Source of the DNA: Salpingoeca rosetta
Lineage: Eukaryota; Protista; Choanoflagellata
DNA length: 64,000 nt
Reading direction: 5' to 3'
NCBI GenBank assembly: GCA_033442325.1
Contig: JAWQFM010000021.1
Coordinates: forward strand, 666,022 to 730,021
Position 1 is the first letter of the stretch; every line of letters starts with the position of its first letter. The position numbers and the translations under genes are program-made. The notes under the pieces are model-generated. The model did no database searches. It was given only the letters and a program-made list of their open reading frames with translations, and was not told the DNA's origin. Positions 30,932 to 64,000 of this stretch are shown here, one piece after another.

Positions 30932-31032
30932 TGCTGCTTGTCCTGCTCCTGCTCTTCATGCTGCTGCTGCTGTTGTTGCTGTTCCAGTTGCTGCTGCTCA
31001 TCATCTGCCGCCTTCATCTTCGTTGCCTCCAT
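30280..31032 (-). CDS. YbaK/ProX-superfamily aminoacyl-tRNA editing (deacylase) domain protein, intronless, N-terminal polyQ
   Basis: HDEVRTSEEAA...QGAKAIVV (conserved Lys), LVFPADEKFNSKKVK, RFA...ITGGVQPGGVPPFG, IVFNAGDRRFSLAI. The GAKA/VPPF pattern is closer to YeaK/ProXp-type members than to canonical YbaK. Confidence 0.9.
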
Positions 31033-31821: not shown

Positions 31822-32725
31822 ATGGCTGACCTTTCAACACGCCTGGCCGATGGCTTCGTATGCATTCCCGTCATCACGGCATGCGATGCCATCGGGCTCT
31901 TTGACTTGCCCTCGAATGCCGCCACGGCATCCAAGGGCGCGTGGACCATCTCCGAACTGGCGCAGCAGCTGGGCGTTCGCGACGGTTACCTCGCCGTCTG
32001 CCTGCGCCTCCTTGCTTCCCTCGGCTGGGTGTCCATCTCCTACACCACCACCACCACCACAGCCACCACAACGGCCACTCCCAGCCAAGCCACGGCCACA
32101 ACAGCCAAAACCAACGCCACAGACGCACAACAGCACGCGCGATTGGAAAAGCTGTTCACCATCAGTCCTGATTGCAAGCACAAGGCAGCCAAGATCCCGC
32201 CGCGGCTGCCTCGCCTCTTGCACCTGGATCTGGTGAACCTCTTTGCCACGAATGATGCTGCTGCTGCTCCAACTCCGTCGTCGTCGTCGTCGTCGTCGTC
32301 GACCTCGACAAGCGCGGCCCTCGACCAGCAGGCCACGGAGTTTGCCGAGATTGTGGCCACCGTCCTCCAGCAACGGCAGGAGGAGCACGCTGCCGACGAG
32401 TTGCTGCAGCAGCTCATTGATGGCTTCATCCTGGCGTGCGTTCTTGTTGGCATGCATCAGGCTGGCCGCCTGCTTGGCCTCAAAGGCGGCAACATTGACG
32501 CCATCGGCAACAGACTCACCGAGGAGCAGGTGGTGTCGCGCCTTGCCACGCAAGGCATCACTGATCCCAAAGATGTCGGCGTTGCCATCAGCACCGCCCC
32601 CATCCACTCCACATGCCGGGCGCCTCTTGTTCGCCTCCTTTCCGTTCACGACTGGCTTCAACAACATGACCAACACCAGCCACAGAAAGATCAACAACAG
32701 CAGCAACAACAACATGACCAGCAAC

Positions 32726-32756
<31 letters not shown>

Positions 32757-44100: not shown

Positions 44101-47100
44101 GGAGTTTGTGCTTGGCCACAGCCTCGGTGAGGTGGTGGCTGCATTTGCACTCGGAGTCCTCTCGCTCGAAGATGGCTTTCGCCTGGCATGCGCCCGTGGC
44201 ACGCTCATGCAGCAGCTGCCGGAGGGCGGGACGATGGCAGCCATCTTCTCCGACATTGACTCGGTGCGCAGCACCATTGCTTCACTCTCGCTTGAGGACA
44301 AGGTCGCCATTGCTGCCGTGAACGGCCCGAAGCTTGTCGTTGTTTCCGGCGATAAGCAGGGCGTGCTGGCGGTGGGCGAGGCGGGCAAGACGCGGTTTGT
44401 TGAGTTGACCGTGTCACACGCGTTCCACTCGCACCTGATGGCCGGCATGATTGCTCCTTTCGAGAAGCGTCTCACGGCGGCGGATGGCGTGACATTCCGC
44501 CCTGCACACAAGCACATGCGCATGGTGTCCACCGTGACTGGCGATGTGATTGAGGAAGAAGACCTGCACAGAGTGGATTACTGGACCACGCATGTCATGC
44601 GTCCTGTGCTGTTCTACAAGGCGCTGCAGCAGGCGGCGGCCAACGGCGCCACCACCTTCATTGAGATGGGCTCTCAGGACATTCTTGTCGGCATGGCTCG
44701 CCGATGCAAGCTCAAGGGCATCACTCTGACCAACATCATCAACAAGAAGGCAACTGCCGACGCCCCAGCCACCCTGGACAAAGTCGTGTCCGACTTGTCA
44801 ACGAGGGAGGGCGTAGTGATTGCTGAACGCAGCCAAGGTGCACAACAAGAACGGCAACAGAAGGAGGATGAGGAGGACCAGTTGCAGACTGCAACCTCGC
44901 CCTTGTTGTCTTTGCGACCATCTGACGTATTTGAACGCCGAAGGGACATTCCCTTCACGCTTCCCACGGCCCCAGCTTCCTCGCTGCCATCCAAGCGAAC
45001 ACAGCACAGCGAGCAGCTTGATGTCAGCCAGCAGCCGCGTTGCCTCGTGCACGCGCATGTTGAGGAATCGCTTGTGGCAGCAGCCTTGCCGGAAGACCCA
45101 GCACACTGGACGGCAGCGCCCATTTCAGCTGCATTTGCAACTTCAACCGCCAAAGTGCCGTCGTGGCTCAAGACAACCACACCCACGAGCAAGCATGATG
45201 TGATTGACGTCGTGAGCCAGCTGGAGCACGCGCCGCAGCTGACGTTTGTGTTTGTGCTGGACGGCCTGAGCACGGCCGATGCGCTGGTGCAGCTGGCCAC
45301 CTGGGGAGCGGCGGTGTGCGAAACCCTGTCCACAAGCACCACCAACATCACCATCGTGGTTGTTTCCTTCCTTGGCGAGAGCAGCGCAGAGGCGGGCGCA
45401 GCACAGCAGCTTGTGCCGTGGCATTTGGCGGGCGCGCTCAAAGCTGTGAGCGTGGAGCTTGGCGTCACTGCGCTGCGCCTGCTCGTGCTCTCGCCCTCTG
45501 CCCCGTGCATTCCCACACTGCCCACGGACACACCACACCTGGTGTTTCTGCAGACCAAGGCAACGGCAGCGCCCAAGGGTGCGCAAGCAGTGCACGCCGT
45601 GCAGGAGCAGGTGTTTGCCGTGGACATACAGGAGTCCGAGACCAGCAAGGCCGAGGCGCATGGTGCTGCGCCATCTTCTCTTTCCAAAGATCAGGCAGCG
45701 CCGGGCACGGCTGTTGTCACGGGCGGGCTTGGCCAACTTGGGCTGGCGGTGGCTGAGGTGCTTCTTGCACATGGGCACGAGCAAGTACTCCTCTGTTCCC
45801 GGCGCAGCGAGAGTGGCACGCCGAAGGACACACAGCATCAGCTGCAACAATTACGTGCGCGCTACTGCGAGGGACAGGCCGACCGCCTGTCTGTGCTGCA
45901 GGTGGACGTGAGCGACGAGCTGATGCTACTGGACACGCTGCGACCTTTTGCTCCACACATTGACGCCATCGTGCATTGCGCAGGCGTCACGCGCGACGCA
46001 GCCATTGACAGCGTTGCGCGCAAGGACGCACAAGACGTGCTGAGCGGCAAGCTCATGGGCGCGAACAACCTGCACACTGCAACCGTTCGCCTCGCCATGC
46101 CCCGCTTGAAGCGGTTTGTGCTGTTCTCCTCAGCCTCTGCGCTCTTCCCCATGCCGGGGCAGTACACATACGCTGCTGCAAATGCAGGCTTGCAAGGTAT
46201 TCACGCCCAGCGCACGGCTGCAAAACACCCGAGCCAGCTCGTCCTGTGGGGTCCGTGGAGCGGGTCAGGCATGATGGCCAAACTCTTGCCGGCCCAGGTT
46301 GCTCGGATGCAGCAGCGTGGCTTCTTCATGCTGGATGCCTCGCTGGGACAGCTGGCACTGAATTTCGTGCTCACAGCGTCGTCGAGCAGTGCATGCCACG
46401 TAACTTTCTGCACAACAGTGCCCACAGCGCACCGCCTCACAGCTGCGCTCGAGCTTCCAGCGACTACAGCAGCCTTTGCTGCTGCGCTGCAGGCAGCTGC
46501 TGAAGAAACCACCAGCCAACAGCACGACCAAGGCACGTCGAAGGCTCGACCGCGCGCACCGCAAGAGGTGTTTGCCCGCCTCGTTGGCATTGTTCAGGAT
46601 CTTCTGGGCACGGCCATCTCACAGCAGGAGCTGACAAAGCCACTCCGAGAGCTGGGATTCGACTCCATCGCTTCCGTCGAGCTTGCGCGTCAGGTTGAGC
46701 AGCAGTTGGGCGTGAGCGTTTCTGCCACAGCAGCATTCGATTTCCCGTCCATCCGCACATTGGCCCAGCACATCCACGAGCGCTTGGCTCACGTCAGCGT
46801 GGGCACGCCCATGTCTTTGTCACGACGAGGCGACAGCAGCGCTGAGATTGCGGTTGTTGGCGTTGGGCTGCGGTTTGCCGGGTGCGACGACGAGGCGTCG
46901 TTCTGGCGCATGCTGGAGGGCGGGGCGTGCACGGTGTCGACGCTGGCATCGCACGCCGGGCAGCGCACGTGGCAGCTGCAGCGGCCCATCAGCCAGGGCG
47001 GCGTGCTGTCGGACGTGAAGAGCTTTGACGCTGCGCTGTTCAACATCTCCAACCGGGAAGCCGTGAGCATGGACCCGCAGCAGCGGATCATGCTTGAGAC

Positions 47101-50100
47101 TAGCTACCGCGCGCTGGAGAGTGCTGGGATGACGCTTGAGCAGGCGCGCGCGGTGCGGACGGGGGTGATGATTGGATCTGGTGTGAACGAGTACCACAAG
47201 GTGCTTGAGCGTGCGCGTGCAGCGGGGAGCTATGAGGCGCAGGCTGGGCACATGATCACGGGGAACACGAGCAGTGTGCTTGCTGGGCGCGTGGCGTATG
47301 CGCTTGGGCTCAAGGGTCCGACGTTCTTTGTGGACACGGCGTGTTCGACGTCGCTTGTTGCTGTGCATCTTGGGTGCCAGTCGCTGCGCAGTGGCGAGAG
47401 CGACGTTGTGCTTGCGGGCGGCGTGAACGTGCTGCTTGACGGGGAGAACTGGGACATGCTGTATGACAGCGGGGCGCTGTCGAAGCAAGGGCAGTGCCGG
47501 GCGTTTGATGCGAGCGCGGACGGGTACGTGCGGTCTGAAGGGTGTGGCGTTGTTGTGCTGAAGCGGCTGGAGGACGCGGTGCGCGACGGCGACCCGATCC
47601 GGGCCGTGATCCGGGGCAGCGCGATGAACCAGGACGGGCGGTCGTCTGGGCTGACTGCGCCGAATGGCCCCGCGCAGACGGCAGTGATTGAGGCTGCGCT
47701 GCGCAGTGCGGGCGTTGCGGCTGGGGATGTTGAGATGCTTGAGGCGCACGGGACGGGGACGCCGCTTGGGGATCCGATGGAGATGCAGGCGGCGATTGCG
47801 GCGCTGCGCAAGGGCGAGAGTGCGTGTGGGCGCGTGCTGCATGTTGGGTCGATCAAGTCGAACATTGGGCATGCGGAGGCGGCGGCTGGTGTTGCGGGCC
47901 TGATCAAGGCGATCCTGAGTGTTGAGCGTGGTGTGATTCCGCGGCACGTGCACTTTGAGGAGCTGAATCCTGCGATTGGGGAGCTACCGCCGAGCGTGCG
48001 TGTTGCGACGGAGACGACGGAGTGGCAGAGCGACGTGCGCGTTGCTGGTGTGAGCTCGTTTGGCTTCAGCGGCACCAACTGCCACGTTATCGTGAGCGGC
48101 TACGACAAGCCGCCCTTGCAAAGCTTGCCAAAGTCCCCAGCTGTCTCTATACCGCTGCTGTTGTCCGCACATTTTGCCAAAGGCCTCCGGTCCCTCCGTG
48201 ACTCCGTCCTCGCTTCCGTTGACGATTCCAGCCTATTTGCCCTTGCGTCGTACCTTGCATTGCGCCGCAGTATGTTTCAGCATCGCCTGGTTGTCTGGCA
48301 CGATGGCCGTGCTACCGTGCCCGCTCCAAGTGCCGTCCTCGTGCCATTGAATTCCCAAGCGCTTCTCAGCATCTCATTCCCTTCAGATATGTGTGATCGT
48401 CTTCTTGGCGTGTTGACAAGCGACACGATGGCTGCACCCACAACCAGAGACGACGTCGTGGATTTGCTCGAGCAAGTGGTGGAAGAACCCGTGAGCTTGG
48501 ACCAGGACACTGCCTCGCACAAGCTGCGGGTCGATGACGCGGCAGAGCACATTCCTGTCACGGAGTGGCTCATGCGCGTGATTGCGGATGCTTTCCGCCT
48601 TGGCTTCACCCTGCAACAATCCAGCCTGGCCATGCTGTTCGATATGCAGGCTTTACCCACGCTGCCGCCACTGCCGCTGAATCAGCAGGAGTACTGGCCA
48701 CCAGTTGACATCTCACCAAATGCGCCATTGACGCTCGTGTCCACGTTCAAGTGGGTCGCCGTGGACCATGGAGACAACGACACCAGCACACTGGATGAGA
48801 GTGTACGGCACGTGTGTATCGGCGCCTCAGACGCGTTTGCTGCGCTGCCCGAGGACAAGCACGTGCTGTCATGGTCACAGGTCGTCAACGTGAGTCACGA
48901 TGAGGAAGCAGCACCTCCGCTGCTTGAAGCGGTGCTAGCTGACATGGATGATGCCGAAGACACCAGCGACAGGAAGCTGACAAGTATCGTGTTGCACCTC
49001 TCCTTCACCGACGTCAGCACAGACGACGCTGCTGCCTCTGCTGTCGCGTCTGCGCAACGTGCCCTTGCTGTGGTGAAGCAGATCTCGGCTGCGTCGCCAT
49101 CATGCGATGTGCACGTGTGCTTGAGTGGATCTCAGGACACAGAGCATCTGTGGGCTCCAGCTATCGGCTTGTTCAAGACAGCCCAGCTGGAAATGCCCCG
49201 TCTCAGTGCTGGTGTGATCGGACTGGAAGAGCCGAGCAGCGATGCGGTCGCAGCTGCCTACGCGCATTTGTGCACCACAAGGGCAACCCTGCTTTGCACA
49301 CCAAGCGGCGTTCAAGAGCTGCAGGCGGCAACGTCTGAGCGCCACGTCGAGGCAACCAACGAGGAGGCAAGCGCTTCTACTCCTGCGCCTGAAGAGCACG
49401 TATGCATCATTGCTGGTGGCGCGGGAAAACTCGGAAAGATCGTGTGCGAACGTTTGGCAAGCCAAGGCTTCAAGGTAGTGGCGCTCAGCAGGCGAAAGCC
49501 CAGTTCTGACGAGGCGAAGCAAAGCGTCGTGTCTGTCGTGTTTGAGCAGTGTGACATCACCAAGAGGGCAGACGTGGACAGTGTCCTGCAAAAGTATGCT
49601 GCAACCGGCAAGCAACTGAGCATCTACCAGTGTGCGGGGAGCTACCATGTTGGTCTGCTGAGTGGGAGCGAGTGGGCGGATGCGGAGGCGGTGCTGGCGC
49701 CCAAGATCCAGGGCACGATGAACCTGCACTGGGCGTCGCTGGAGCACAGCGTGTCGCAGTTTGTGCTGTTCTCGTCTGCGTCGTCTGTGTTTGGGTCTGT
49801 GGGGCAGGCGTTCTATGCGTCTGGCAACAGCTTTCTGGACCGGTTCCACAGCTGGCGCGTGCGGCAGGGGCTGCCGTGCACGTGCGTGAACTGGGGTCCG
49901 TGGGGCGGGTTGTACCCGGGGCACGTTGAGAAGCGATGGGCGGTTGAAGGGTATGCGCCGCTCGGGCAGGAGGAAGGGCTTTCCGTGCTTGAGGGGCTTG
50001 TGCAGGCTGATGCGAGCGACGCCGGGAGCACGGTTGTTGCGCGTGTGCTGCCTGAGGAGTTTCTCCGGGCGATGCAGGCGCCACTGCGCAGCACGGAGCT

Positions 50101-53100
50101 GGGCAGCGTGCGGGAGATGCTTGAGAAGGAGGTTGCTGCGCGTCGGGAGGCGCTGGCTCGCATGGGCGGCGGCAGTGGCGGCGGCGGCGGTCGTGGCTGG
50201 CGTGGCGCTGGCTCACATGCGGCGGGCACGGGCGGACGGCTCGGGGAAGCGCACAAGGCCGTTGTGACGCGGCAGGAGGTGCGCGATGGCGTGATTGGCG
50301 TGCTTGCGCAGGAGCTTGGTGGGGACGCGAAGGACATCCGTGCTGCGGCGAAGGCGAACACGCCGTTCTCTGAGCTTGGGCTGGAGTCGTTTCTTGCGAT
50401 GGAGATTCGGTCGCAGCTGCAGTCGCGGTTTGCGGTTGACCTGTCTGCGACGGTGTGCTACGACTACCCGACGGTGGACAAGCTTGCTGAGCACGTGTGC
50501 AAGCTGGTTGGCGCTGTGAGCAGCGACATGGCTGGCGAGGGCGAGGTGGTGGTGAGCACGAAGACGGGGCGGCGGCTTGCGGCTGAGGCCGGGCTGGCTG
50601 GCGCGATGGCTGAGCGCAGCGGTGGAAGCGGCAGCTTTTGCTGTCGTCGTGCTGTCTGTGTGTCTGCCTGGCGGGGTGTGTGACGAGGAGGTGCTGTGGG
50701 GGGCGTTGTGTGGCGGGGAGGATCTGGTTGAGGTTGTGCCTGGGGAGCGGTGGGATGTTGATGCGTACTATGATGCTGACGGGCACGCTGAGGGGCGGAT
50801 GTGGAGCCGGCGGGGCGGGTTCCTGCGCGGGATTGACGAGTTTGATGCTGAGTTTTTTGGCATCACGGGCCGTGAGGCGAGCAGCATGGACCCGCAGCAG
50901 CGGCTGCTGCTTGAGACGAGCTGGCACGCGCTTGAGAGCGCTGGGCTTGGCGGGAAGCGGCTTGGGCGTGGGCGTGCTGGGGTGTTTGTTGGTGTTTCTG
51001 GGAGCGAGTTTGCGACGCTGTGCGGGCGGGTGTCTGGTGCGAGCGCGGTTGGGGATGTGCATGCAGCGACGGGGACGGCGAGCAGCGTTGTAGCTGGGCG
51101 CGTGTCGTATGCGCTTGGGCTTGGCGGGCCGAGCGTTGCCGTGGACACTGCATGTTCGTCGTCGCTTGTTGCTGTGCATCTTGGATGCCAGTCGCTGCGC
51201 AGTGGCGAGAGCGATGTTGTGCTTGCGGGCGGCGTGAACATTGTGCTGCTGCCTGACGGCAACATCCACTTGACGAAGACGCGAATGCTGTCGAAGCAAG
51301 GGCAGTGCCGGGCGTTTGATGCGAGCGCGGACGGGTATGTGCGGTCTGAAGGGTGTGGCGTTGTTGTGCTGAAGCGGCTGGAGGACGCGGTGCGCGACGG
51401 CGACCCGATCCGGGCCGTGATCCGGGGCAGCGCGATGAACCAGGACGGGCGGTCGTCTGGGCTGACTGCGCCGAATGGCCCCGCGCAGACGGCAGTGATT
51501 GAGGCTGCGCTGCGCAGTGCGGGCGTTGCGGCTGGGGATGTTGAGATGCTTGAGGCGCACGGGACGGGGACACCGCTTGGGGATCCGATGGAGATGCAGG
51601 CGGCGATTGCGGCGCTGCGCAAGGGCGAGAGTGCGTGTGGGCGCGTGCTGCATGTTGGGTCGATCAAGTCGAACATTGGGCATGCGGAGGCGGCGGCTGG
51701 TGTTGCGGGCCTGATCAAGGCGATCCTGAGTGTTGAGCGTGGTGTGATTCCGCGGCACGTGCACTTTGAGGAGCTGAATCCTGCGATTGGGGAGCTACCG
51801 CCGAGCGTGCGTGTTGCGACGGAGACGACGGAATGGCAGAGCGAAGAGCGCGTTGCTGGTGTGAGCTCGTTTGGCTTCAGCGGCACCAACTGTCACATGG
51901 TTGTTCAGAACTACTCTCGCCCTGACACGACTGGCGCTGAGATTGACTGTTTTGATGATCAGGTCTCGTCCTTGCTCTTCTTCTCCGCTCACACCAAGGT
52001 TGCGTTGATCGAACAAATTGGCACCTTCGTCCAAAGGCTTGACCGCGAATCGGCATCTACATTCACTCGTGCCGCTCGAACCACACACGCCCGTGCTCGG
52101 TTGGACCTCTCTGTCCAGTTCGTGTTTACGTCCCTTGCAGACGCACAAGTTGGGCTTCGGTCCTGGCTGCAGTCGGCTCGATCGATCGACCACCTGGACC
52201 AGCCGCTTCTGCTTGACTTTGGTGATGTCCACTCCCGTTCTGAATCTCTGCTGTTGGCACTTCCGATGTCATCTGCATCGCCCCTGGCGAGCATGGTTGA
52301 GAGTGCGCGTGAACTCTGCCCTGGTGCGGATGAGCAACCGCTTGTCGAAGACCTGTGCTTGACGCGTCTCATCGCAGAGCAAGGCCTTGCGGTTTCAGTG
52401 GTGAACCACCCGCAGGCAGATTTGCTGAATGCCTGCACGCAATCATCTGTCACGCTGGAGTCGCTTCTACTGCAAATTTCCACCGCAGCTGAGGCTCCAC
52501 ATTCACCTGATGCCACTGTTGGCACTTCCTTTTCTGCTGACGCACTGCTGAAGATGCTGTCTTTCCATGGCCAGGTGACAGGCACGGATTGCACTGCGAC
52601 CGCGCAACTGGCGGGCTTGTCCACCGACACTCCTCGCAAGGCAAGCGATTGGGTTCACCTCCCCGCGTACCCATTTCAGCACCAGCGGTACTGGATCCAC
52701 AGTGACAAACCTGTGCACATTGGATTGGTTGATGACCGCTTGGTTCTGTCGGAGGTGCCGGGTCTGAAGGACGACACCGTCGCCACAACAGTGACTGCGG
52801 AGGATGAGAAGACCAAGGTCACGGAGCTGTCGGACGTTGCTGCGGAATGGCTCATCATGGATTCGACAAACGCCTGCGATGCACAAGCGCTTGCGCTGCC
52901 TGCTGAACGGGTGATCGTCGCTGACGACCATGTGCTTGACAGCGCATGGGACTTTGATGGTGCCCGGACCATTGCCTTGGCGTGCTCCACGGTTGAGAAA
53001 GCCGAGCAACTGGTGTTCTCCGTGCTGCATGATGTCTCATTGGGCCCAGGTCCATCACCAGCGATGACCGTGCTGTACTGTGCTCAACCTGTGTCCATGT

Positions 53101-56100
53101 GGACGCCGATTCGCAGCATGGTGCAGACCGCACGCTTGGAGCTCGGGCTCACCATCCGCGAACTTGCACTGGATGCAGACGAAGTACCAGGCAAGCTTAG
53201 GCCCCTTGCCACACTTGAATCCGGCCTTTCAGCGATGACACCCACCTTGGCGTGGCCACGTATGCCTGGGTGGCTGTCCGTGCCGCGCACGGCGCTCATC
53301 ACGGGCGGATCTGGAAGCCTCGGCCTTCAGACGGCGTGGGTTCTGGCTGAGGAAGGGTTTGCGCGCGTGGTGCTGATGGGGCGTCGATCCACGAAAGCCC
53401 TGTCCCCTGAAACGCGGGACGCAATGGAGCACATGCAGTTGCGCTTTGGCACGAAGGTCTCGTACGTGTCACTTGATTTCACTGCAAGTGATTCAGAGAT
53501 GCAGGATGCAATGCGGAGTCTTGCAAGCGTGTTGGGCGATGCACGCACCATTGATTGCATTGTGCATGCTGCAGGCATCAACAAGGACAAGCCCTTCTCC
53601 AGCCTGACATGGGATGATGTGACTGCTGTTCGCTCAAGCAAGGGCAAGGCCCTTGACGTCCTGTTGCGCCAGCTGGCCACGGCTGACATCGCTGTGGGCA
53701 TGGCCCTGTTGTATTCGTCAATCAGCGCTGTGTTTGGCGCGCGCGGGCAAGCGAACTACAGCCTGGCCAATGGAGAGCTCATTGCCCAGGCAGCGTCTCT
53801 CACTGCCGCTGGAACCCCCGCGTGTGCCATCTGCTGGGGACCCTGTGCCAACTCGGCCATGGTGGACAGCTTGACAGCTGCCCACATCGCACGCATGCGA
53901 GCGCATGGTGTTGACCTGCTGTCTGTCAGCGAATTTCGCACGGCCCTGCGCCAGGCGCTGGCAACGGTGGCAACATGCGGCGAGGCCACCAAACCCACTG
54001 CACTTGTGGCCTATGCCAAATGCGATGGTGATGCGCAGGCAGAGGAGACACCAACAAAGGCACAGCAGGAGTCTGCCAGAGCTGAAGCGTGGAACGAAGA
54101 GGATCTTGTCACGGAAATGTCCGACATTGCCCGCACAGTGTTGTGTTTGCGAGGTGAGGTTGGAGATCCGGATGAAACGACCTTTGGAGACTTGGGCGTG
54201 GACTCGCTGCTGGCGGTTGACATCCAGAAGGAGGTGCAGGAGCGCTTTGGCGTAGCCGTCACAGCGACGTTTGTGTATGATTACCCAACGCTGCGCGAAG
54301 CAGCAAGGCACGTGCGGTCGCTGCTGTCATCTGTCACTCCCGCTGTCAGTGGCGACATGTCACTGGTGCCGTTCCGACACAGCCAGGAGATTGCGGTTGT
54401 TGGCGTTGGGCTGCGGTTTGCCGGATGCGACGACGAGGCGTCGTTCTGGCGCATGCTGGAGGGCGGGGCGTGCACGGTGTCGACGCTGGCATCGCACGCC
54501 GGGCAGCGCACGTGGCAGCTGCAGCGGCCCATCAGCCAGGGCGGCGTGCTGTCGGACGTGAAGAGCTTTGACGCTGCGCTGTTCAACATCTCCAACCGGG
54601 AAGCCGTGAGCATGGACCCGCAGCAGCGGATCATGCTTGAGACTTACTACCGCGCGCTGGAGAGTGCTGGGATGAACGCTTGAGCAGGCGCGCGCGGTGC
54701 GGACGGGGGTGAGGATTGGGTCTGTGAGAACGAGTACCACAAGGTGCTTGAGCATGAGCGTGCAGCGGGGACGCTATGAGGCGCAGGCTGGGCACATGAT
54801 CACGGGGAACCCGAGCAGTGTGCTTGCTGGGCGCGTGTGCGTATGCGCTTGGGCTCAAGGGTCCGAGCGTTCTTTGTGGACACTGCATGTTCGACGTCGC
54901 TTGTTGCTGTGCATCTTGGATGCCAGTCGCTGCGCAGTGGCGAGAGCGATGTTGTGCTTGCGGGCGGCGTGAACATTGTGCTGCTGCCTGACGGCAACAT
55001 CCACTTGACGAAGACGCGAATGCTGTCGAAGCAAGGGCAGTGCCGGGCGTTTGATGCGAGCGCGGACGGGTATGTGCGGTCTGAAGGGTGTGGCGTTGTT
55101 GTGCTGAAGCGGCTGGAGGACGCGGTGCGCGACTGCGACCCGATCCGGGCCGTGATCCGGGGCAGCGCGATGAACCAGGACGGGCGGTCGTCTGGGCTGA
55201 CTGCGCCGAATGGCCCCGCGCAGACGGCAGTGATTGAGGCTGCGCTGCGCAGTGCGGGCGTTGCGGCTGGGGATGTTGAGATGCTTGAGGCGCACGGGAC
55301 GGGGACGCCGCTTGGGGATCCGATGGAGATGCAGGCGGCGATTGCGGCGCTGCGCAAGGGCGAGAGTGCGTGTGGGCGCGTGCTGCATGTAGGGTCGATC
55401 AAGTCGAACATTGGGCATGCGGAGGCGGCGGCTGGTGTTGCGGGCCTGATCAAGGCGATCCTGAGTGTTGAGCGTGGTGTGATTCCGCGGCACGTGCACT
55501 TTGAGGAGCTGAATCCTGCGATTGGGGAGCTACCGCCGAGCGTGCGTGTTGCGACGGAGACGACGGAGTGGCAGAACCCTGAGGCTGATGATGGTGCACC
55601 TTTGCTTCTCGCTGATGGCTCTGGAGCTCGTTTGCTTGGTCACCGCATCGCTGGTGTAAGCTCGTTTGGCTTCAGCGGCACCAACTGCCACGTTGTGGTT
55701 CAGAATACGCATTTGCTCGACACCGAGTCCCTTGCTGCGCCACCGCCGATTCCCCTCGTGTTCTGCTTTGGCAGCCCCTCAGCCGCACACACCTCTCATC
55801 GCCTGCGCCAGTGCATGGCCGGCCTCTCGTCGTCGGACAACGCTGTTGACTTGTTGGGCCTGTGGCTATTTCTCGCTGACAACACCTCCGACTTTGCGCC
55901 TGAGGTCGTGATTGTTGCTCGCACGCGCCAGGACTTCTTGACGGCTGCGTCGACCATCCTCAGCTCGAGCGATGATGCGGAAACCAAGCTTGCCGTGCGC
56001 GTGAGCCACGAGGATGAGCTGCTGCAGCAAGGCGTGTCACCCTTTGACGTGTTTGACGTCTCTGGCCTGGACGACTGGAAACGCGTGCTTCCCTGGATTG

Positions 56101-59100
56101 AAACCACAGCGGACGCTGCGACGGTTGCAGAATTGGCATCCGCATTGCCGCTCTCGGAGTTCCTTGGCCGCGTGCTCATCCCACACCTGCAGTCTGAGGT
56201 GTCGGACGAGTCCTCCACATCGCCGACGGCGCTGCACGACGTGAACCGTCGCGTGTTGGCACCGGTAGTGCAAGAGCTGCTGCATCTTGGCGGCACGGGC
56301 GCGACCCTGGCTGACATTCGCCGCACCTCCAGCTACAGCAAATGGACGACGCAGTTCATGTCCAAGCGATACTGGCTCACGCCTGGTCCAGGCCTGACGC
56401 CAGAGTGTGCTGCGATGGATACGATGCACACGCTGGAATGGACGACCACGCCGCTTCCGCTTGAACCTCGCGTCACCGCCCGCCGGGAGCGCGCACCCAA
56501 GGGGGTGGTGCTGCTTGACCTGTTTGGTGCTGCCGACGATGCCCTGCGAAGCGAGTTGCCCCATCGCGTGGATGTGCTTTGCAAGGACGGCACTGCGTGC
56601 TCTGTGAGCAAATGCAGCCTGGCTAGCGCCAAGGGCAGCACAACAGCGACGTTGACGACGTCGTTCGATCTGGCGCCGGCCGACGTGACGCCTCAGCGCG
56701 TGTTCGCCCTGCTTTCTCCTCGGTCCCTTGGCTGGACTGCGGTGCAAGCTGCGGTGGTGTGCGTGCCACAGCTTACCGCGACCGTCAGCATGGCGGCGGT
56801 CGTGCAACAACTGTACCCGTGGCTGCTCAAGTGCATCCAGGAGGGAGTGCGCCTGCGTGTGCTGGTGCCGGAGACGCTTGGCTCGTCAGCCAGCTCTGGC
56901 CGTGCTGTTCGCAAGTGGCAGGCGCTGACCGCGGCTGTTCGCACCGCCTGTCTTGAGCAGCAAACTGTGGATCACGCTGTGGTGTTTGTTGGGGCTGGCG
57001 TTGCGCAGCGTGACCTGGCCAGCGTGCTTCTCGCTGTGGACGACCTGCCACCCGTGACGGGCTTGGTTGCCAGCACTTCCCCGAACAAGGGCATGGATGC
57101 GGTATACTTGGAGCCGCGCGCTGTTCCCCTGTCCCAGAGCAGTGCCTTGACGCAGGGCAGGCTTGTGCCCTCGGCGCACGCGACTGCGCCAGGTGTCGCA
57201 ACTGGTGACGTGGCTGAGGTCGTGCTTGTGACGGGTGGCTCTGGTGCACTGGCACAGGTGGCGCGGGACACGCTGGCGCAGCAGTGCTCGTTGTTGGTGC
57301 TGCTGACGCGTGCGGAGTGTGCTGCCGCACAACCGCTGCCACGCGGCTATCTCCGTGGGCATGTGGTGTCGATGACGTGCGACATCACGGACCCGCGCAG
57401 CGTCAGGCTCTTGCTTGTTCGCTTGGGCAGCCTGGTGAAGAAGACACAACCGCAGCGGCGGATTCGGGTGACGAGCGTCGTCCACACGGCTGGGTGCACG
57501 CGCGATGCCCCCATCCGCCACCAGACGCCGGACCTGTTTGAGGAGGTGATGCAGCCGAAAGTGGCTGGTCTGCGCATCCTGCTGCAGGAGCTGTTTTCGT
57601 GCGGGCACAGGTGTGAGAGCGTGCTACTCTTCTCGTCTTCCAGTGCCGTGCTGGGCAGCCCGGGCCAGCTCAACTATGCCGTTGCCAATGCGCTGGCAGA
57701 CGCAACTGCACGCGAGCTTGTGCCCAACACGCACACGATCCACTTTGGGCCTTGGGACCCTGCCGTCGGTGGCATGACGGCGCAGCTGTCGTTGGCCAAC
57801 AGGGTGCGCATCGAGAGCCATGGCATGGGCTTCATCACGGAGGCGCAGGGCAAGCTGGCGCTCGCCAGCCTGTGGGCGACATGTCGCCCCGGCCGTGCTG
57901 ACGAGTTTGCGGAGCAGGTCACCTGGCAGGAGGTTGCGTGCATTGCGCTTGCCCAGACATCACCTCTCACGCCCAGCGCAGGTGCTGCTGACACGCAAAG
58001 GCCAGCAGCGGCCACCTCTCACGCCGCAGTTGCAACAGGGGCGCACCCAGCAGCCGGTGGCGGCCCGTCAGATGTACGAGAGCTTGTTGCTCGGCTGCTC
58101 GGCATGGATGTTTGGGACTTGGATGACAAGTCGCCGCTGCTCGCGTTTGGTCTTGATTCGCTGGTGGCGGTGGAGCTCCAGGGACAGCTGCAGCGGCTGT
58201 TTGGCGTCACGCTGTCCTCTGACGAGCTGCTGAGCCCGAGCTGCTCCGTCTCGTTCCTCGCTCGGGAACAGGCCGTCGCAGCAGCCCGCAAGCAGCAAGA
58301 GGCGGAGGCGGAGGCGTGGGCAAGCGAGGCAACAGCCACAGCACCCACACCAGCGCAAAGCGGCGGCATTGTGGGGTTTGTCCCACCAACGCCCACCGCC
58401 GCTGCTGCCGCCGCCAGTGGAGGTGGACTGGAGGCGGCAGACTTTGGCGTGCTGGAGTTGCTTCGCAGCCTTCCTCTAGCGCCCGCGCTGCTGTCAGACA
58501 TTGACTCGCTGTTGTCCAAGCTGCGTGGGCCCACAGCCATCCCTGCTGGTCCCCTGAGCGGTGGCGGGCGCGCGGCAACCCCAACGGCCGTGCAGCTGCT
58601 GGACCGGTACGGTGCACGGTTTGGGCGGGGGCGATCCGGGTCGCGAACACCAACACCGCAGCCGCGCACGGCCTCCCCTGCATTCAGGCCGCCACAGCTG
58701 GCGTCCAGGCTGCACCACGTTCAGCAGCAACAGCAGCAGCTGCAGCTGCTGCAGCAGCAGGGTCAGTACCACCCATCCACATCTGATGCGGGTTCGGAAG
58801 CTGCTGTTCGCAGGCCTGGTGGTGTGCTGACAGAGCTGTCACTGAACCAGCGTGCCATGTGGTATCTGTGGAAGACCCTCCCCCAGGCAGATGCGTACAA
58901 CATCTGCTACGTTGCGCGTGCGCGGCAGAAGCTGGACGTTGCTCGCTTGGAGCAGAGCCTTGCCGCTGTCGTGGACCACCACGCTTGCCTGCGACAGGTG
59001 TTTGATGAGGAGACGGGAGATCCGAGCACGCTGACGGTTGCCGATGCCCTCCGCTTCACGACCCGACCCATTCCAGGCGTGGGCCACGACCAAGATGTGG

Positions 59101-62100
59101 CAGCAACAACAACTGCAGCTTCGACAGCAGAAGAAACGCCGGAGCAGGCAGTGCTGCGTGCCGTGGCCCAAGTCCTGCGGCAGCAATGGTCGCTCTCTGA
59201 GGGCCCTGTTGTGGACTGCATGGTGTTTGCAAATGCCACGGAGCAGTACGTGGCCTTGTTTGTGCACCACATCTCTGCCGACTTTGTTGCGCTGCACACA
59301 CTTGCGGAGGAGTGGATGGCGCTGTACGCTGGCCGCTCTGCGCTGCCATCCGGTGCGGTGGAGCCGACATACAAGGACTTCATTGCCTGGCAGGCGCAAC
59401 AGCAGGTGGCCCTGCGCGATGCCGCCCTCTCCTACTACGAGGCGGAGCTGAGCCGCCTGCCGGCAGACCGGTCCCAGTTGCCGCCCGAGCTGCGTGCGGG
59501 CGACGAGGACAGCGGTGACGTTGACGGTGGCGGTGGCGCTGATCACGGCCACTCCGTGCAGTTCACCCTGCCACGCACGGAAGGGGATGCCCTGCTTGCC
59601 ACCAGCAGGCAGCAGCACGTGACGGTGTTTGCGCTGCTGTTGTCGCTGTATCAGCTCGTGCTGTCGCACGCGGCCAGCGAGCGTGAGCTGTGCGTGCTGT
59701 GCCCGACCGCGGGTCGCCCCGCCGAGTTTCGGCAGGTGGTGGGGCACTTCATCAACACGGTGCCCGTGCACACAACGGTGGACATGTCACGCACGCTTGC
59801 CCAGCACGTGCAAGCGGTGTTTGCAGGTGTGCAGCGCGCCATGCGCTTCCAGCACTTTTTCTTCTCCAACGTGGTGCGTGCCATGCCCCATGTGCGGCGG
59901 GCAGGTGCCAGTCAGCCCATCAGCGACGTGGCCCTCAACTTCTTTGACACCGGCGGCCTGCGCAGTCACGGCGTGCGTGGCGACAGTGGTGCGAGTGGGA
60001 CGAGTGGTGCGAGTAGTGCGCTGGAAGCCTTGACTGTGGCCCAGCAGATGACTGCGTTCGCGCTGATGCTTCATGTGGTTCGCAAGGGTGACGGCGAGTG
60101 GCACGTTGAGCTGCGCTCCCGAAAGAGCACCGCGGCAGCCCGTGAGTGCCTGGCGCGTATGTCGTGGCAGCTGGAGACGGTGATGCGGCGACTCGCAGCA
60201 AACCGCGAAGGCGTGCTTGCAGGCAACATTGGGCACACCATGGTGCAGGCGGACGTGCTGAGCCTGTATCGCTTCCAGCCACAGCACGAGCACCAGCTGC
60301 TGCATGAGCTGTCGCGGCAAGGCCTGGAGCGCGGCGCATGTTCGCTGTCGGACCTGGCCGTCGCCGACGAGGACGGCGAGCTCACGGTTGCCGAGTACCT
60401 GTGGCTGGCCAACCGCGTGCATGCGTGGCTGACGGACAAGGGCCTGCCCAAGGGCACCCCCGTGGGGCTGGACATGCCCAAGTGCCGGTATCAGCTGGCT
60501 GCGGCCGTGGGTGTGCTGCAGGCTGGCTGTGCGTTTGTGCCGTTCTCGGGAACGTGGCCGGATGAGCGCACGGCGCTGGTGCGAGACAAGTGCGAGCTGC
60601 GGGTTGTGCTGTCGATTCGCGGCGCCGGTGCCCCCGCTCTGCAAGGACTGGAGCGCATCGAGCTTGACGCGTTGCACGAGGACCTCCGGACGCAGCTCGG
60701 CGCTGCGAAGGGCACGAGCTTGGTCGGCTCGAGCCTGGTGGCTGATGCCAAGCTGGTTGAGCCGCTGGTGCCGTTTGCGCAGGTGATGCCAGAGGACCCG
60801 GCGTACATCCTGTTTACCTCGGGCAGCACGGGCACGCCCAAGGGGGTGGTGGTGCAGCATGGTGGCGCGTGCAACACGGTCATCAACACGGCAGACGTGT
60901 TTGGCATGTCAGCCCTGGAGCGTGGGTTCCGCGTGTTTGCCATCACGCAGCTGACGTTTGATCTTGCCATCTTTGACACGTTCTCAGCGCACATGTGCGG
61001 TGGTGCCGTGATTGTGCCAACGGACCGCATCAGCCGGGACCCCGAGGCGTGGGTGGACCTTTGCCACAAGTACCAAGTGACCACGTGGAACAGCGTGCCT
61101 GCGTTTGCGCAGATGCTGTGCGAGTACTGCGAGACGCTTGAGCTGCGTGCGCCGTCCATCCGGCACTTTATGCTCAGCGGCGACTTTGTGCCGCTGCCGC
61201 TGCCTGCACAGCTGCGCCGCGTGACCACGCCGGAGTGCGCTGTGCTCGCGCTTGGTGGGTGCACGGAGACGAGCATCTGGAACAACTTCTTTGACGTGAA
61301 GGAGGTGTGTGACGACTGGCGCACCATTCCCTACGGGTACTCCTTGCCCGGACAGCGGGTGCTTGTGCTGGACGAGAACCTGCAGCCGTGCGCCGTGGGC
61401 GAAGAAGGGCAGCTGTACATTGCCGGCGACAGCGTGGCCATTGGCTACTACAAGTCGCCAGACCTCACGCGCCGCGCGTTTGTGCCCCTGCCAGGGTGCC
61501 TGTTGAACGAGGATGGCGAACTTGCCAGCACCGCCGGAGAGGGCGCATGGCCGGGCTCGGCTGTGCTTGGACTGAGCGAGTGGGAGAGGGTGCTGCCACG
61601 GCGGCTGTACGCGACGGGTGACCGTGTTGTGCTGCTTTCTGACGGCGCGCTGTCGCTGCTGGGGCGCATCGACTTCCAGGTGAAGATTGGCGGCTTCCGC
61701 GTGGAGCTGAATGAGATTGACGCGCACCTGTCGCGCTTCCCCGGCATCCACACGTCATGCGTGGTGGTGATCAACAAGCAGCTGGTGGCGTACTTTTGCA
61801 CCAAGTTGCCCACGACAGCCACACCAACTGCAACAACTGCAACAGCAGGGGGCGCAGAAGGAAGCGCGCAGACGCCAGCAGAGGGGCGCCCGGAATGGAG
61901 CACGGAGGCGTTGGTGGAGTTCCTGCGCACGAAATTGCCAGACTACATGGTGCCTGAGCGATACATTGAGCTTGAGTCGTTGCCGCTGAACGTGAACGGC
62001 AAGATTGACCGCAAGATGCTGATGAAGCCCGAGTTTGCGGCTGAGGCGGCGACGGCCGGGCGCGCGCACGAGGTTGGCCCTTCGTCTGGCGTGTCTGATG

Positions 62101-62339
62101 CTGGGGAGCAGGTGCTTCGGGTGTGGCAGGACGTGCTTTTGTCTGGACTGCCCATCCCTGATGTGCGCGTTGTGCTGAAGGAGACCATCAAGCAGGCGGG
62201 CGGCGATTCGCTGTCGACTGTCATGTTTGTGTCGCGGCTGCGCAAGCAAGGCTTTGCCCTCAGCTTGCAAGCGGTTGGTCCAGACACCACGCTGGAACAA
62301 GTCATTGCTCTTGTCGAACGCAAGCAGAGCAAGGCCTGA
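31822..62339 (+). CDS. Giant hybrid type I PKS-NRPS: MT-GNAT-ACP | KS-DH-ER-KR-ACP | KS-AT-KR-ACP | KS-KR-ACP | KS-KR-ACP | KS-KR-ACP | C-A-PCP (frame breaks at ~42890, ~50630, 54675-54870)
   Basis: Four consecutive ORFs (31822-42942, 42848-50683, 50577-54683, 54837-62339) join within or at the start of KS domains with no intron-like sequence. Five KS (TACS, HGTGT, GHxExAAG), one AT (GHSLG, HAFHS), five KR, six ACP, C (HHISAD), A (FTSGSTGTPKG), PCP (GGDSL). Confidence 0.93.
35410..42245 (+). other. PKS module 1: KS-(AT remnant)-DH-ER-KR-ACP, fully reducing
   Basis: KS HTACSSS; DH HVIMQQELLPGA and LDAGMQ; ER SLNFRDVL..LYPG and HAGAGGVG; KR GGLGALG, HAAGVTSD, YAGAN; ACP GLDSV. Confidence 0.85.
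42325..46790 (+). other. PKS module 2: KS-AT(malonyl)-KR-ACP
   Basis: KS DTACSSS; AT FCGQGSQ, GHSLGE, AVNGP, VSHAFHS; KR GGLGQLG, HCAGVTRD, YAAAN; ACP GFDSI. Confidence 0.88.
46841..50510 (+). other. PKS module 3: KS-KR-ACP (AT-less)
   Basis: KS DTACSTS; KR GGAGKLG, GQAFYASGN; ACP GLESF. Confidence 0.83.
47478..55575 (+). repeat. Three near-identical ~550-bp KS 3' segments (47478-48028, 51290-51844, 55025-55575); the KS3 5' half (46844-47330) also recurs at 54387-54880
   Basis: Nucleotide strings match almost base for base, including synonymous sites. Confidence 0.93.
50630..54325 (+). other. PKS module 4: KS-KR-ACP (AT-less)
   Basis: KS DTACSSS; linker LPAYPFQHQRYW; KR GGSGSLG, HAAGINKD, GQANYSLAN; ACP GVDSL. 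Confidence 0.85.
54385..58265 (+). other. PKS module 5: KS-KR-ACP (AT-less)
   Basis: KS DTACSTS; KR GGSGALA, HTAGCTRD, GQLNYAVAN; ACP GLDSL. Confidence 0.82.
58830..62339 (+). other. Terminal NRPS module C-A-PCP, no TE or reductase
   Basis: C: LSLNQRAMW, HHISADF, GHFINTVP. A: AYILFTSGSTGTPKG, TFDLAIFD, WNSVP, LSGD, LGGCTETSIW, YATGD, GRIDFQVKIGGFRVEL, NGKIDR. PCP GGDSL, then stop. Confidence 0.9.
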
Positions 62340-63354
62340 GGGTGTGTGTGTGTGGTAGGGGGGGGGGAGTGTGTGGGTGGGTGTATGGGTGTATGGGTGT
62401 ATGGGTGTGTGTGTGTGTGGTGGTGGTGGTGCGCGCGCGCGCGCGGGAAAAGCGCTCATTTGTCAAGAGACCCAGGCAGCAGACACAGCTCCCAGGACGG
62501 CTTGAGCCGTGTGGAGACACACGGGCAGGGCTGACGGGTCGCAAAAGACTCGAAAGCACTGGGAGTGCGCGATGATGGTACAGGAGACGCAATGCGGTTA
62601 CCAATATCGGCAGTGTCGATACATTCCCAACCCCCACAGAGTACTGAAAAAACAACCCGCGATTCAATCGTTCTAACACCCCGGCGTGTGTCGGCTTCGA
62701 TCTAAACCAGTCTCAATTGGCCATACTTGCTCTGCTGGCTAAATCATAACGCTGCTTAGCCCGATAAGGCCTCCGGGGGGTATGTACGATAGAGGAGGGC
62801 TTAAAGGGAAAACAGAAAGCTGTACCATAGATCAACTGATTATAAGGGGGGGGGGAGGGTGTGTGGGTGGGTGTATGGGTGTATGGGTGGTATGGGTGTG
62901 TGTGTGTGTGTGGGTGTGGGTGTGCGCGCGCGCGCGCGTGAGTGTGTGTGTGTATGGGTGGGTGTGTTGAAGGAGAGAAGGTGCGTTGCTTGGGTGTGCT
63001 GAGGGATTAATGTTCTTCAGAGGGTGCGACACTTGTGAGATCTTAGACATGGATTGGTGGACGGAGTGTGTTTTCCCTTGTTTCTGATATGCTTCCATTT
63101 GTCAACTAGAAATGTGATTTGCTTCGTTTGCTTCGCATTGTGTGTTGTGTGTTCATCGCTCTTACTTGCTCTGACTCTCTTTCTTTCTTACTGATTTTCT
63201 TTTCATGTGAGCGTCGTGTGGGGTGTTGAGGCCACTGCGGCGGCCCATCTTACTCGTTGCTGTGCATTTGCTTGAGCGGGAACTTGCATGTGCACGAGGT
63301 AGCAAGGAGAAGATGCCGCCTGTCTCTGTGGGCAACCGCGGTGCCCCATTACAC

Positions 63355-63860
63355 GTTGCTCGATGTGTGGTTTGAGTTTGCCTGATGTGAATAAGCCACT
63401 GTCAGTGTTGTTTATCATCATCTGTGTTTTCATCTCGCATGTGGTCATTTTAGCCATTCGAACATCACTTACTGTATCATGTACTCACTCGCACATTGTA
63501 CCGCGAAAACGATATGGCAAGTCAGAGGTGGAGATGTAACACAAACAGAAACAAAGCGAGAGAGAAAGAAACAGAAAAGGAAACAGGACACAGCACAACA
63601 CAAGCTTGTTGTTGCTCGATGTGTGGTTTGAGTTTGCCTGATGTGAATAAGCCACTGTCAGTGTTGTTTATCATCATCTGTGTGTTTTCATCTCGCATGT
63701 GGTCATTTTAGACATTCGAACATCACTTACTGTATCATGTACTCTCACTCGCTCATTGTACCGCGAAAACGATATGGCAAGCCAAGGGTGGAGATGTAAC
63801 AGAAACAAGGCAAGAGAGAAAGAAACAGAAAAGGAAACAGGACACAACACGACACAAGCT
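63355..63860. repeat. Tandem duplication of a ~256-bp AT-richer unit (63355-63606, 63611-63860)
   Basis: Both copies begin gttgctcgatgtgtggtttgagtttgcctgatg and end ...acacaagct, with a few substitutions and indels. Confidence 0.92.
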
Positions 63861-64000
63861 GAACGCTCGTGATTGTCTGACGCATGAGGCCAACAACCAC
63901 AGATAGTTAGAACACAACATGTCGCAGACAGCGTTCTCCCAACTCCGACTGCTCCAACGCCTCAGCATCAAAGCCTTTGCTGTCAAGCAGAGCCAGCCAC

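What the first reader, a model, noticed from the sequence alone, without database searches (positions are those of the whole stretch)
58830..62339. Cysteine-type A domain paired with an ordinary C domain and no release domain
Reading pocket residues by eye (FDLAIF, WNS, FMLSGD, ALGG, TSIW) gives about DLFNMSLIWK, nearly the Cys code DLYN(L/M)SLIWK of thiazoline-forming NRPSs such as yersiniabactin HMWP2. Those A domains normally follow a cyclisation domain (DxxxxD), but here the partner has canonical HHxxxD (HHISADF). This predicts an uncyclised N-acyl-cysteinyl thioester with a free thiol. The protein stops right after the PCP, so release needs a trans factor, a downstream NRPS elsewhere, or thiol/hydroxyl-driven self-cyclisation.
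Basis: partly seen in the sequence, partly recalled or inferred. Interest (0 to 1): 0.72.

Follow-up and report, generated by a model that had tools for sequence, protein, structure and literature searches.

The report
Cysteine-loading end module of protist PKS-NRPS
This is the last module of a giant, transcribed polyketide-peptide synthetase gene in a eukaryotic microbe (other scan notes say a choanoflagellate). It most likely attaches an uncyclised cysteine to a fatty-like chain and then stops with no built-in release enzyme, which is a sound but fairly ordinary enzyme architecture in an unusual host.

Summary
Window 58830-62339 encodes C (HHISADF), A and PCP (GGDSLS), with a stop 42 residues after the carrier serine.

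- **A domain:** the pocket reads DLFNMSLIWK. That is one conservative change from PchE (DLFNLSLIWK), whose structure holds Cys-AMP.
- **C domain:** it groups with ordinary and acyl-accepting C domains, not with Cy domains.
- **3' end:** stranded RNA-seq covers the module without joints. The transcript runs through the stop into a non-coding 3' UTR, with poly(A) at 63476, and meets a convergent gene, so no TE or R exon follows.
- **Rest of the genome:** this is the only condensation domain, so no downstream NRPS exists.
- **Relatives:** two metagenomic relatives (69% and 41% identity) keep the C motif, the Cys code and the PCP terminus. dN/dS is 0.27.

The C + Cys-type A pairing is a minority arrangement but not new. 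Five bacterial modules in my sample have it.

The module is not a protein of its own. It ends a roughly 30-kb PKS-NRPS (AprA-like starter, five KS modules).

Caveat: that gene's frame is broken three times upstream by 1-nt indels, not introns. Whether these are real or assembly errors is unresolved.

Verdict: new member of a known kind, with moderate interest.

The parts
31822..42942 (+). Upstream ORF 1 of the same assembly line: AprA-like starter (AprA_N, WH, MT2-like), ACP, KS1, ER, KR, ACP, N-half of KS2
   Evidence: Pfam
42848..50683 (+). ORF 2: C-half of KS2, the only AT, KR, ACP, KS3, KR, ACP
   Evidence: Pfam
50577..54683 (+). ORF 3: KS4, KR, ACP, N-part of KS5
   Evidence: Pfam
42870..42890 (+). 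Frame break J1: +1 shift inside KS2, in unique DNA, with no extra DNA that could be an intron
   Evidence: tblastn of KS3 against the window and three-frame translation
50556..50680 (+). Frame break J2 in the ACP-KS4 linker
54675..54867 (+). Frame break J3: five 1-nt indels in KS5 relative to its 95%-identical paralog KS3 (+A 54675, -G 54723/4, +C 54772, +T 54838, +G 54867; net +3); in-frame TGA at 54681 and 54777
54837..58829 (+). Same ORF as the finding: C-part of KS5 (54843-55505), KR (57222-57755), ACP (58071-58232), Gln-rich linker
   Evidence: Pfam
58836..60125 (+). Condensation domain, ordinary type; HHISADF at 59265-59285
60354..62015 (+). Adenylation domain with motifs A3 (60816-60845), A4 FDLAIFD (60957-60977), WNSVP (61086-61100), MLSGD (61170-61184), LGGCTETSIW (61251-61280), A7 (61608-61622), A8 (61662-61709), A10 NGKIDRK (61995-62015); code DLFNMSLIWK
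62148..62312 (+). Terminal PCP; Ser of GGDSLS at 62208-62210
62337..62339 (+). Stop codon TGA, present in the mRNA
62340..63476 (+). 3' UTR. 62514-62887 has no RNA coverage and is flanked by ~90-nt direct GT/GC-rich repeats (UTR intron or strain indel). Poly(A) addition at 63476. No frame stays open for more than about 60 codons
30283..31032 (-). Divergent neighbour: stand-alone tRNA_edit (ProX/YbaK-superfamily) protein; possible but untested trans factor

Best explanation
The stretch is the terminal elongation module (C-A-PCP) of a roughly 10,000-residue hybrid PKS-NRPS encoded at 31.8-62.3 kb of the window in a eukaryotic microbe.

Shown:
- The domain order and intact catalytic motifs.
- A PchE-type cysteine pocket.
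- A C domain of the ordinary, acyl-accepting kind rather than a cyclisation domain.
- Transcription of the module, with a stop directly after the PCP and no further coding exon.
- Conservation of all of this in two relatives under purifying selection.

Inferred:
- The A domain loads L-cysteine on the PCP.
- The C domain transfers the reduced, hydroxylated polyketide chain from the preceding ACP to the cysteine amino group.
- This gives an N-acyl-cysteinyl-S-PCP that keeps a free thiol, with no thiazoline.
- The product leaves by hydrolysis through a trans-acting enzyme. Candidates are the stand-alone thioesterase-domain ORF on contig 9 or an unknown hydrolase. It does not leave through a downstream synthetase.
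For: - **Domains and motifs:**
- **Pocket:** aligned residue by residue to PchE (DLFNLSLIW), BmdB (DLYNLSLIW) and FmoA3 (different code). The best single-domain PDB hits are PchE, FmoA3 and BmdB. PchE's code with bound Cys-AMP is in PMC8807600, and the Cys code pattern is in PMC12283262.
- **C domain:** PDB hits are only ordinary C domains, although Cy-containing entries were in the same database. The closest bacterial C domains are N-terminal or follow FAAL-ACP, with the same HHxxxDF variant. In the tree, the three eukaryotic C domains form one clade (100) inside a clade (84) holding all LCL, most N-terminal (17 of 22) and all acyl-accepting rows and no Cy rows; Cy rows are the farthest.
- **RNA:** coverage is continuous over 58400-62326 with no joints or indels. 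Poly(A) is at 63476. A convergent gene ends at 63723.
- **No coding potential in the UTR:**
- **Rest of the genome:** one C domain in the whole genome. No TE or R domain on this contig. No Pfam hit in the next 10 kb. A PPTase is present.
- **Orthologs:** P0356 (69% identity, identical code, same stop) and P0077 (41%, HHINADF, DLFNLSLIW, ends after tandem PCPs).
- **Selection:** dN/dS is 0.27.
Against: - No biochemical data exist; code-based specificity can fail in diverged eukaryotic A domains. Identity to PchE is about 45% in the core, estimated from the alignment.
- In this assembly the gene's frame is broken at three sites upstream (seven 1-nt indels). The module may therefore not be fed by the full line in this strain, unless these are assembly errors.
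- The terminal PCP scores just under Pfam's cut-off (20.7 against 20.8).
- The release step has no direct evidence at all.
Confidence: 0.6

Rival explanations
1. The module is part of a recently broken, non-functional (pseudo)gene in this genome. The assembly line is interrupted in KS2, in the ACP-KS4 linker and in KS5, so at most an N-truncated half-KS-KR-ACP-C-A-PCP protein (from Met 54843) could be made, and no acyl-cysteine is produced.
For: The frame breaks are indels, not introns. The KS3 protein aligns across J1 with no extra DNA. There are five 1-nt indels and two in-frame TGA codons in KS5. RNA reads over the unique 4 kb of the module showed no indel against the assembly, so the assembly is clean there. 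No allelic contig exists.
Against: ORFs of 1368-3706 codons survive with no nonsense substitution at 65% GC. Five indels within 192 nt, mostly insertions, look like a local consensus artefact in a near-identical repeat. Another scan note reports a 1-base error elsewhere in this assembly (unchecked). The module is transcribed and has been under purifying selection.
Confidence: 0.22
2. The A domain activates something other than cysteine, such as serine, 2,3-diaminopropionate, alanine or a modified cysteine. The product would then have no free thiol.
For: Specificity here is inferred from ten residues only. Position 239 is Phe and position 299 is Met, and the domain carries a ~30-residue insert between A6 and A7. 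FmoA3, a close structural relative, activates a serine derivative (per my own knowledge, not a tool result) with a related scaffold.
Against: FmoA3's pocket differs at four positions, whereas ours differs from PchE at one, and Met at 299 occurs in accepted Cys codes (PMC12283262). The code is identical in the 69% ortholog and differs only by Leu at 299 in the 41% ortholog.
Confidence: 0.12
3. The protein is not the last subunit. The PCP-bound acyl-cysteine is passed in trans to another synthase, for instance the second assembly-line PKS on contig 5, which extends and releases it.
For: In bacterial lines, subunits ending in a carrier domain are normally followed by another subunit (my own knowledge). 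A second large PKS exists (6015-codon frame on contig 5).
Against: The genome has no other C domain. The contig-5 PKS does not start with a KS; it has about 700 residues and its own ACP before the first KS. According to another scan note (unchecked), it also lacks a release domain.
Confidence: 0.05

Closest known systems
Cys modules of thiazoline-forming NRPSs: PchE (PDB 7emy), BmdB (7ly7), HMWP2-type
   Same: A-domain scaffold and pocket. PchE is DLFNLSLIWK and BmdB is DLYNLSLIWK, against DLFNMSLIWK here. They share the LGGxTExSIW A5 region and are the best single-domain structural-database hits.
   Different: Those A domains sit behind a Cy domain (DxxxxDxxS) that makes a thiazoline. Here the partner has HHISADF and groups with ordinary C domains, so no heterocycle is expected.
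Bacterial NRPS modules with an ordinary C domain and a Cys-type A domain (P0206 of Pseudoalteromonas piscicida, P0367 with three modules, P0451)
   Same: The same pairing of an HHxxxD C domain with a DL[FY]NMSLIW A domain at normal spacing. P0206 has the identical nine-residue code.
   Different: They are internal modules of multi-module peptide synthetases with peptidyl donors. A-core identity is only 38-41%. P0451's C-terminal sequence looks like a thioesterase by eye, which I did not check by domain search.
Acyl-accepting (lipoinitiation or PKS-to-NRPS interface) C domains, e.g. the C domains after FAAL-ACP in P0105 and P0231
   Same: They follow an ACP rather than a PCP, carry the HHxxxDF variant of the active-site motif, and are among the nearest bacterial C domains.
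   Different: Only 25-28% identity. The three eukaryotic C domains form their own long branch.
Eukaryotic hybrid PKS-NRPS lines: nematode PKS-1/NRPS-1 (mentioned in PMC10394414) and fungal PKS-NRPS hybrids (my own knowledge)
   Same: A polyketide chain is handed to a C-A-carrier module inside a eukaryotic gene.
   Different: Fungal hybrids are single iterative PKS modules ending in a reductase or Dieckmann cyclase domain. This line is multi-modular and bacterial in style, has an AprA/SxtA-like starter, and has no release domain.

Membership tests
NRPS elongation module (C-A-PCP) | Condensation domain with the HHxxxD active-site motif | tested here: met
   PF00668 at 150.8 bits; HHISADF at 59265-59285
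NRPS elongation module (C-A-PCP) | Adenylation domain with core motifs A3-A10, including Asp235 and Lys517 | tested here: met
   PF00501 at 220.5 bits; TIGR01733 at 303 bits, below its cut-off of 317; all motifs located
NRPS elongation module (C-A-PCP) | Carrier domain with the phosphopantetheine-attachment serine | tested here: met
   GGDSLS at 62199-62216. It aligns to the LgrA PCPs. PF00550 scores 20.7 bits, marginally under the 20.8 cut-off. The motif is conserved in both orthologs.
Cysteine-activating A domains of the PchE/HMWP2/BmdB type | Specificity code DL[FYW]N[LM]SL[IV]WK | tested here: met
   DLFNMSLIWK, read from the alignment to PchE and BmdB
Cysteine-activating A domains of the PchE/HMWP2/BmdB type | Cysteine-dependent adenylation and loading | not testable with these tools
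   Needs an ATP-PPi exchange or carrier-loading assay
Heterocyclisation (Cy) domain | DxxxxDxxS in place of HHxxxDG, and clustering with Cy domains | tested here: not met
   HHISADF is present. No Cy entry appears among the PDB hits. Cy rows are the most distant group in the tree.
Self-releasing terminal module (TE, R or terminal C domain in cis) | A release domain after the last carrier domain | tested here: not met
   The stop is 42 residues after the serine. The rest of the transcript is non-coding. There is no TE or R domain on the contig. Both orthologs end the same way.
Continuous hybrid PKS-NRPS megasynthase | One uninterrupted reading frame, or frames joined by introns, from the starter to the terminal PCP | tested here: inconclusive
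   KS-KR-ACP-C-A-PCP are in one ORF. Three indel-type frame breaks lie upstream.

The most novel reading that the evidence does not exclude
A lineage of unicellular relatives of animals keeps an assembly line that makes a free-thiol N-acyl-cysteine polyol lipid. It releases or proofreads the product with the divergently transcribed ProX/YbaK-superfamily aminoacyl deacylase next door, recruited from tRNA editing to act on a cysteinyl or acyl-cysteinyl carrier thioester. That would be a new kind of trans release factor for a TE-less synthetase.
Probability: 0.05. Interest if true: 0.75.

Novelty: new member of a known kind. Interest (0 to 1): 0.42.

Why it matters
Assembly-line PKS-NRPS genes in protists are catalogued but almost never linked to a product. 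Choanoflagellate lines are mentioned in the papers I found only in a repeat survey (PMC8256042, PMC10394414).

This module gives a concrete, testable prediction for one such line:
- a thiol-bearing N-acyl-cysteine lipid;
- a conserved terminus without a release domain, implying a trans-acting release step;
- a transcribed gene in an organism that other scan notes name as a genetically tractable model.

It matters for natural-product discovery and for how bacterial-style megasynthases are kept in eukaryotes. It does not overturn any rule of NRPS enzymology.

Tried and rejected
- **Downstream TE/R exon:** rejected by RNA-seq (poly(A) at 63476, convergent neighbour), by the lack of any open frame in the UTR, and by the empty 10 kb downstream.
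- **Partner NRPS elsewhere:** rejected, because there is only one C domain in the genome.
- **Contig-5 PKS as a KS-first downstream subunit:** not supported; it begins with about 700 residues and its own ACP.
- **Introns as the cause of the three upstream frame breaks:** GT/GC-AG pairs that restore the frame exist by chance, for example 54664-54867. Every option at J1 and J3, and the best-consensus (GTGAGC) donor options at J2, would delete conserved KS residues. J1 has no spare DNA.
- **tRNA_edit neighbour as YbaK proper:** not met. TIGR00011 scores 55 bits against a cut-off of 153, and the best structure match is an uncharacterised protein.
- **More relatives:** the metagenome scan found none. 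The bacterial genome scan found only 23-25% identical modules. The first word search was swamped by multi-module bacterial NRPSs.
- **Odd joint at 58753>58722:** it comes from reads and a contig whose flanks do not match here, so it is most likely another CAG-rich locus.
- **Neighbouring ORFs within 30 kb upstream:** no tailoring or hydrolase domains.
Full report
**What is there.** The finding lies in ORF 54837..62339 (+, 2500 codons).
- Pfam places a KS C-terminal half, KR, ACP, Condensation, AMP-binding and a last PP-binding domain in this one frame.
- Three further long ORFs lie upstream on the same strand: 31822..42942, 42848..50683 and 50577..54683.
- Those ORFs carry an AprA-like starter (AprA_N, winged helix, MT2-like), then KS, ER, KR and ACP, and three more KS-KR-ACP sets. 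There is only one AT.
- The stretch is therefore the last module of a roughly 30-kb hybrid PKS-NRPS with five KS modules, not a protein of its own.
- The sequence after the stop is GT/GC microsatellite and low-complexity DNA. Neighbours include RIC1, a eukaryotic trafficking gene. The genome has 55.4 Mb in 68 contigs.
- Other notes of this scan name the organism as the choanoflagellate Salpingoeca rosetta. I did not verify this.

**The observation.**
- The translation shows HHISADF, all A-domain core motifs and GGDSLS.
- Using the A4, A5 and A10 anchors, the pocket is D L F N M S L I W K.
- A direct HMMER alignment to solved structures fixes the register. PchE reads DLFNLSLIW, BmdB reads DLYNLSLIW, and FmoA3 reads a clearly different DAYNVSSCW.
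- PchE's code, with cysteinyl-AMP seen in the pocket, is published (PMC8807600). A survey of bacterial codes gives the Cys pattern with Leu/Met at 299 (PMC12283262).
- PchE, FmoA3 and BmdB are the best single-domain structural-database hits of the A core.

**The C domain.**
- Against the PDB it hits only ordinary C domains (AB3403, TycC, LgrA, TomB, Txo). It hits no Cy domain, although Cy-containing entries were found through the A domain in the same database.
- Its nearest bacterial C domains are N-terminal ones, or ones that follow FAAL-ACP. Several of these carry the same HHxxxDF variant.
- I built an HMM of the C superfamily and labelled 1733 domains in the fetched proteins by motif and context. 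I then made a tree of 117 of them.
- The window's C domain and its two orthologs form one clade (support 100). That clade lies inside a 50-row clade (support 84) holding all LCL, most N-terminal (17 of 22) and all acyl-accepting rows and no Cy rows.
- Cy rows are the most distant group (nearest path 3.71, against 2.67 for LCL).
- The refuter 'clusters with Cy' is not met.

**How unusual the pairing is.** Among 1569 A domains in 385 fetched proteins, 47 have a Cys-type code.
- 39 follow a Cy domain and one is N-terminal.
- 7 follow an HHxxxD C domain: the two orthologs and five bacterial modules.
- The five bacterial modules are in P0367 (three), P0451, and P0206 of Pseudoalteromonas piscicida. 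One search confirms their spacing and labels.
The exception is already present in bacteria.
- The sample is biased toward relatives of the query.

**The end of the gene.** Three stranded RNA-seq runs were laid on 58400-63999.
- They give continuous coverage of 58400-62326 on the strand expected for a + strand mRNA. There are no joints and no indels.
- Two partial single-base differences appear: 60291 (His to Tyr) and 61651 (Leu to Gln).
- Depth is undiminished up to 62326. There is no GT between 62327 and the stop, so the stop is in the mRNA.
- Coverage is nil at 62514-62887 and resumes on the same strand at about 62970-63448. Untemplated A-runs mark a poly(A) site at 63476.
- The uncovered piece is flanked by ~90-nt direct repeats that the tool skipped. 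It is a 3'-UTR intron or a strain indel. Either way it lies after the stop.
- No frame in the covered UTR stays open for more than about 60 codons.
- From 63636 on, reads come from the opposite strand, with a T-run at 63723. This is a convergent neighbour's 3' end.
- The next 10 kb has no Pfam hit.
- No TE or R exon can be added.

**The rest of the genome.**
- There is one Condensation domain in the whole genome, this one.
- Thioesterase-domain hits lie only on contigs 9, 22 and 7. The best is a 504-codon ORF with no PKS domain beside it.
- There is no NAD_binding_4 hit on this contig.
- One PPTase is present.
- The only other assembly-line PKS is a 6015-codon frame on contig 5. It starts with about 700 residues and an ACP before its first KS, so it does not look like a downstream subunit.

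**Relatives.**
- The word search found one whole-module relative, P0077, on a JGI metagenome contig. It has KR, ACP, C (HHINADF), A (DLFNLSLIW) and two PCPs, then stops. It shows eukaryote-like inserts and the same GC pattern.
- The exhaustive search added P0356, on an ENA metagenome contig. It is 69% identical, with HHISADF and the identical code. It ends at the same residue position, followed by non-coding low-complexity DNA. Its frame is open to the 5' end of its contig.
- dN/dS is 0.27 against P0356 (dS 0.92) and 0.41 against P0077 (saturated).
- Bacterial genomes hold nothing closer than 25% identity. A metagenome scan added nothing.
- The module and its carrier-domain terminus are conserved features of a small eukaryotic family.

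**An unresolved problem upstream.** The four ORFs are not separated by introns.
- **J1 (about 42889):** a +1 shift inside KS2, in unique DNA. The KS3 protein aligns straight across it with no spare DNA.
- **J2:** a shift in the ACP-KS4 linker.
- **J3:** KS5 is 95% identical in DNA to KS3, but carries five 1-nt indels within 192 nt (net +3). ORF 3 and ORF 4 therefore share a frame and are separated by two TGA codons.
- There is no second copy of the region in the assembly.
- Frame-restoring GT/GC-AG pairs exist, but all of those at J1 and J3, and the best-consensus donor options at J2, delete conserved KS residues.
- **Favouring assembly error:** the clustering of indels, the excess of insertions, the absence of any nonsense substitution in about 10,000 codons at 65% GC, the transcription and the purifying selection.
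- **Favouring a real break:** the error-free 4 kb of the module and J1 lying in unique DNA.
I put about 0.2 on a really broken gene.

**How it most likely works.**
- **Shown:** the architecture, the motifs, the Cys-type pocket, the ordinary C domain, the transcript end and the conservation.
- **Inferred:** Cys is loaded on the PCP. The C domain acylates its amino group with the ACP-bound, largely beta-hydroxylated chain. The result is N-acyl-cysteinyl-S-PCP with a free thiol. Release is hydrolytic and in trans.
- I consider self-release unlikely on ring-size grounds (my inference). Thiol attack would need a four-membered thiolactone. Attack by a chain hydroxyl would need a ring of seven or more members.
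- The divergent neighbour at 30283-31032 is a tRNA_edit protein. It is about 60% identical to bacterial 164-residue proteins. It is not the YbaK equivalog. It is a speculative candidate for release or editing.

**Known or new.**
- The papers I could search mention choanoflagellate assembly-line PKSs only in passing. None describes this gene.
- The module type, the C + Cys-A pairing and TE-less termini are all known in bacteria.
- I class it as a new member of a known kind, of moderate interest because of its host and its clear, testable product prediction.

Noticed in passing
window 42870-42890, 50556-50680, 54675-54867: The PKS-NRPS reading frame is broken three times by 1-nt indels, five of them clustered in KS5 relative to the near-identical KS3. 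They are not introns. Whether they are real or assembly errors is undecided.
   Followed up: partly
window 30283-31032 (-): A stand-alone tRNA_edit (ProX/YbaK-superfamily) gene sits 790 nt from the PKS-NRPS start and is transcribed divergently. It is about 60% identical to bacterial 164-residue proteins and has a low-complexity N-terminal extension.
   Followed up: partly
window 63355-63837: A ~258-nt tandem duplication (82-99% identical copies) spans the zone where the poly(A) sites of the two convergent genes lie (63476 on +, 63723 on -).
   Followed up: no
window 62340-62970: About 90-nt GT/GC-rich direct repeats 490 nt apart flank a stretch with no RNA coverage in the 3' UTR. This is an intron or a strain deletion. 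The reads tool skipped the repeats, so no junction was seen.
   Followed up: partly
window 58722-58753: A CAG-rich (poly-Gln) linker before the C domain attracts reads and a 109-nt contig whose flanks do not match here. They probably come from another CAG-repeat locus.
   Followed up: partly
window 46831-47854 vs 54375-55400 vs 50834-51665: KS3 and KS5 share 95% DNA identity, and KS4 shares 87% with KS5. Long identical tracts suggest recent gene conversion between modules.
   Followed up: partly
G000 contig 5, 2049160-2067204 (-) (L011-L013): A second assembly-line PKS forms a single 6015-codon open frame with at least four KS domains. It begins with about 700 residues without a Pfam hit plus an ACP.
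   Followed up: partly
L001 (P0077): The 41%-identical metagenomic relative ends in two tandem PCPs rather than one. It has a ~45-residue low-complexity insert in the C domain at the same place as a shorter insert here.
   Followed up: no
window 60291 and 61651: RNA reads of one run show partial differences: C>T (His to Tyr, 4 of 6 reads) and T>A (Leu to Gln, 3 of 22 reads). These are strain or allele variants, or errors.
   Followed up: no
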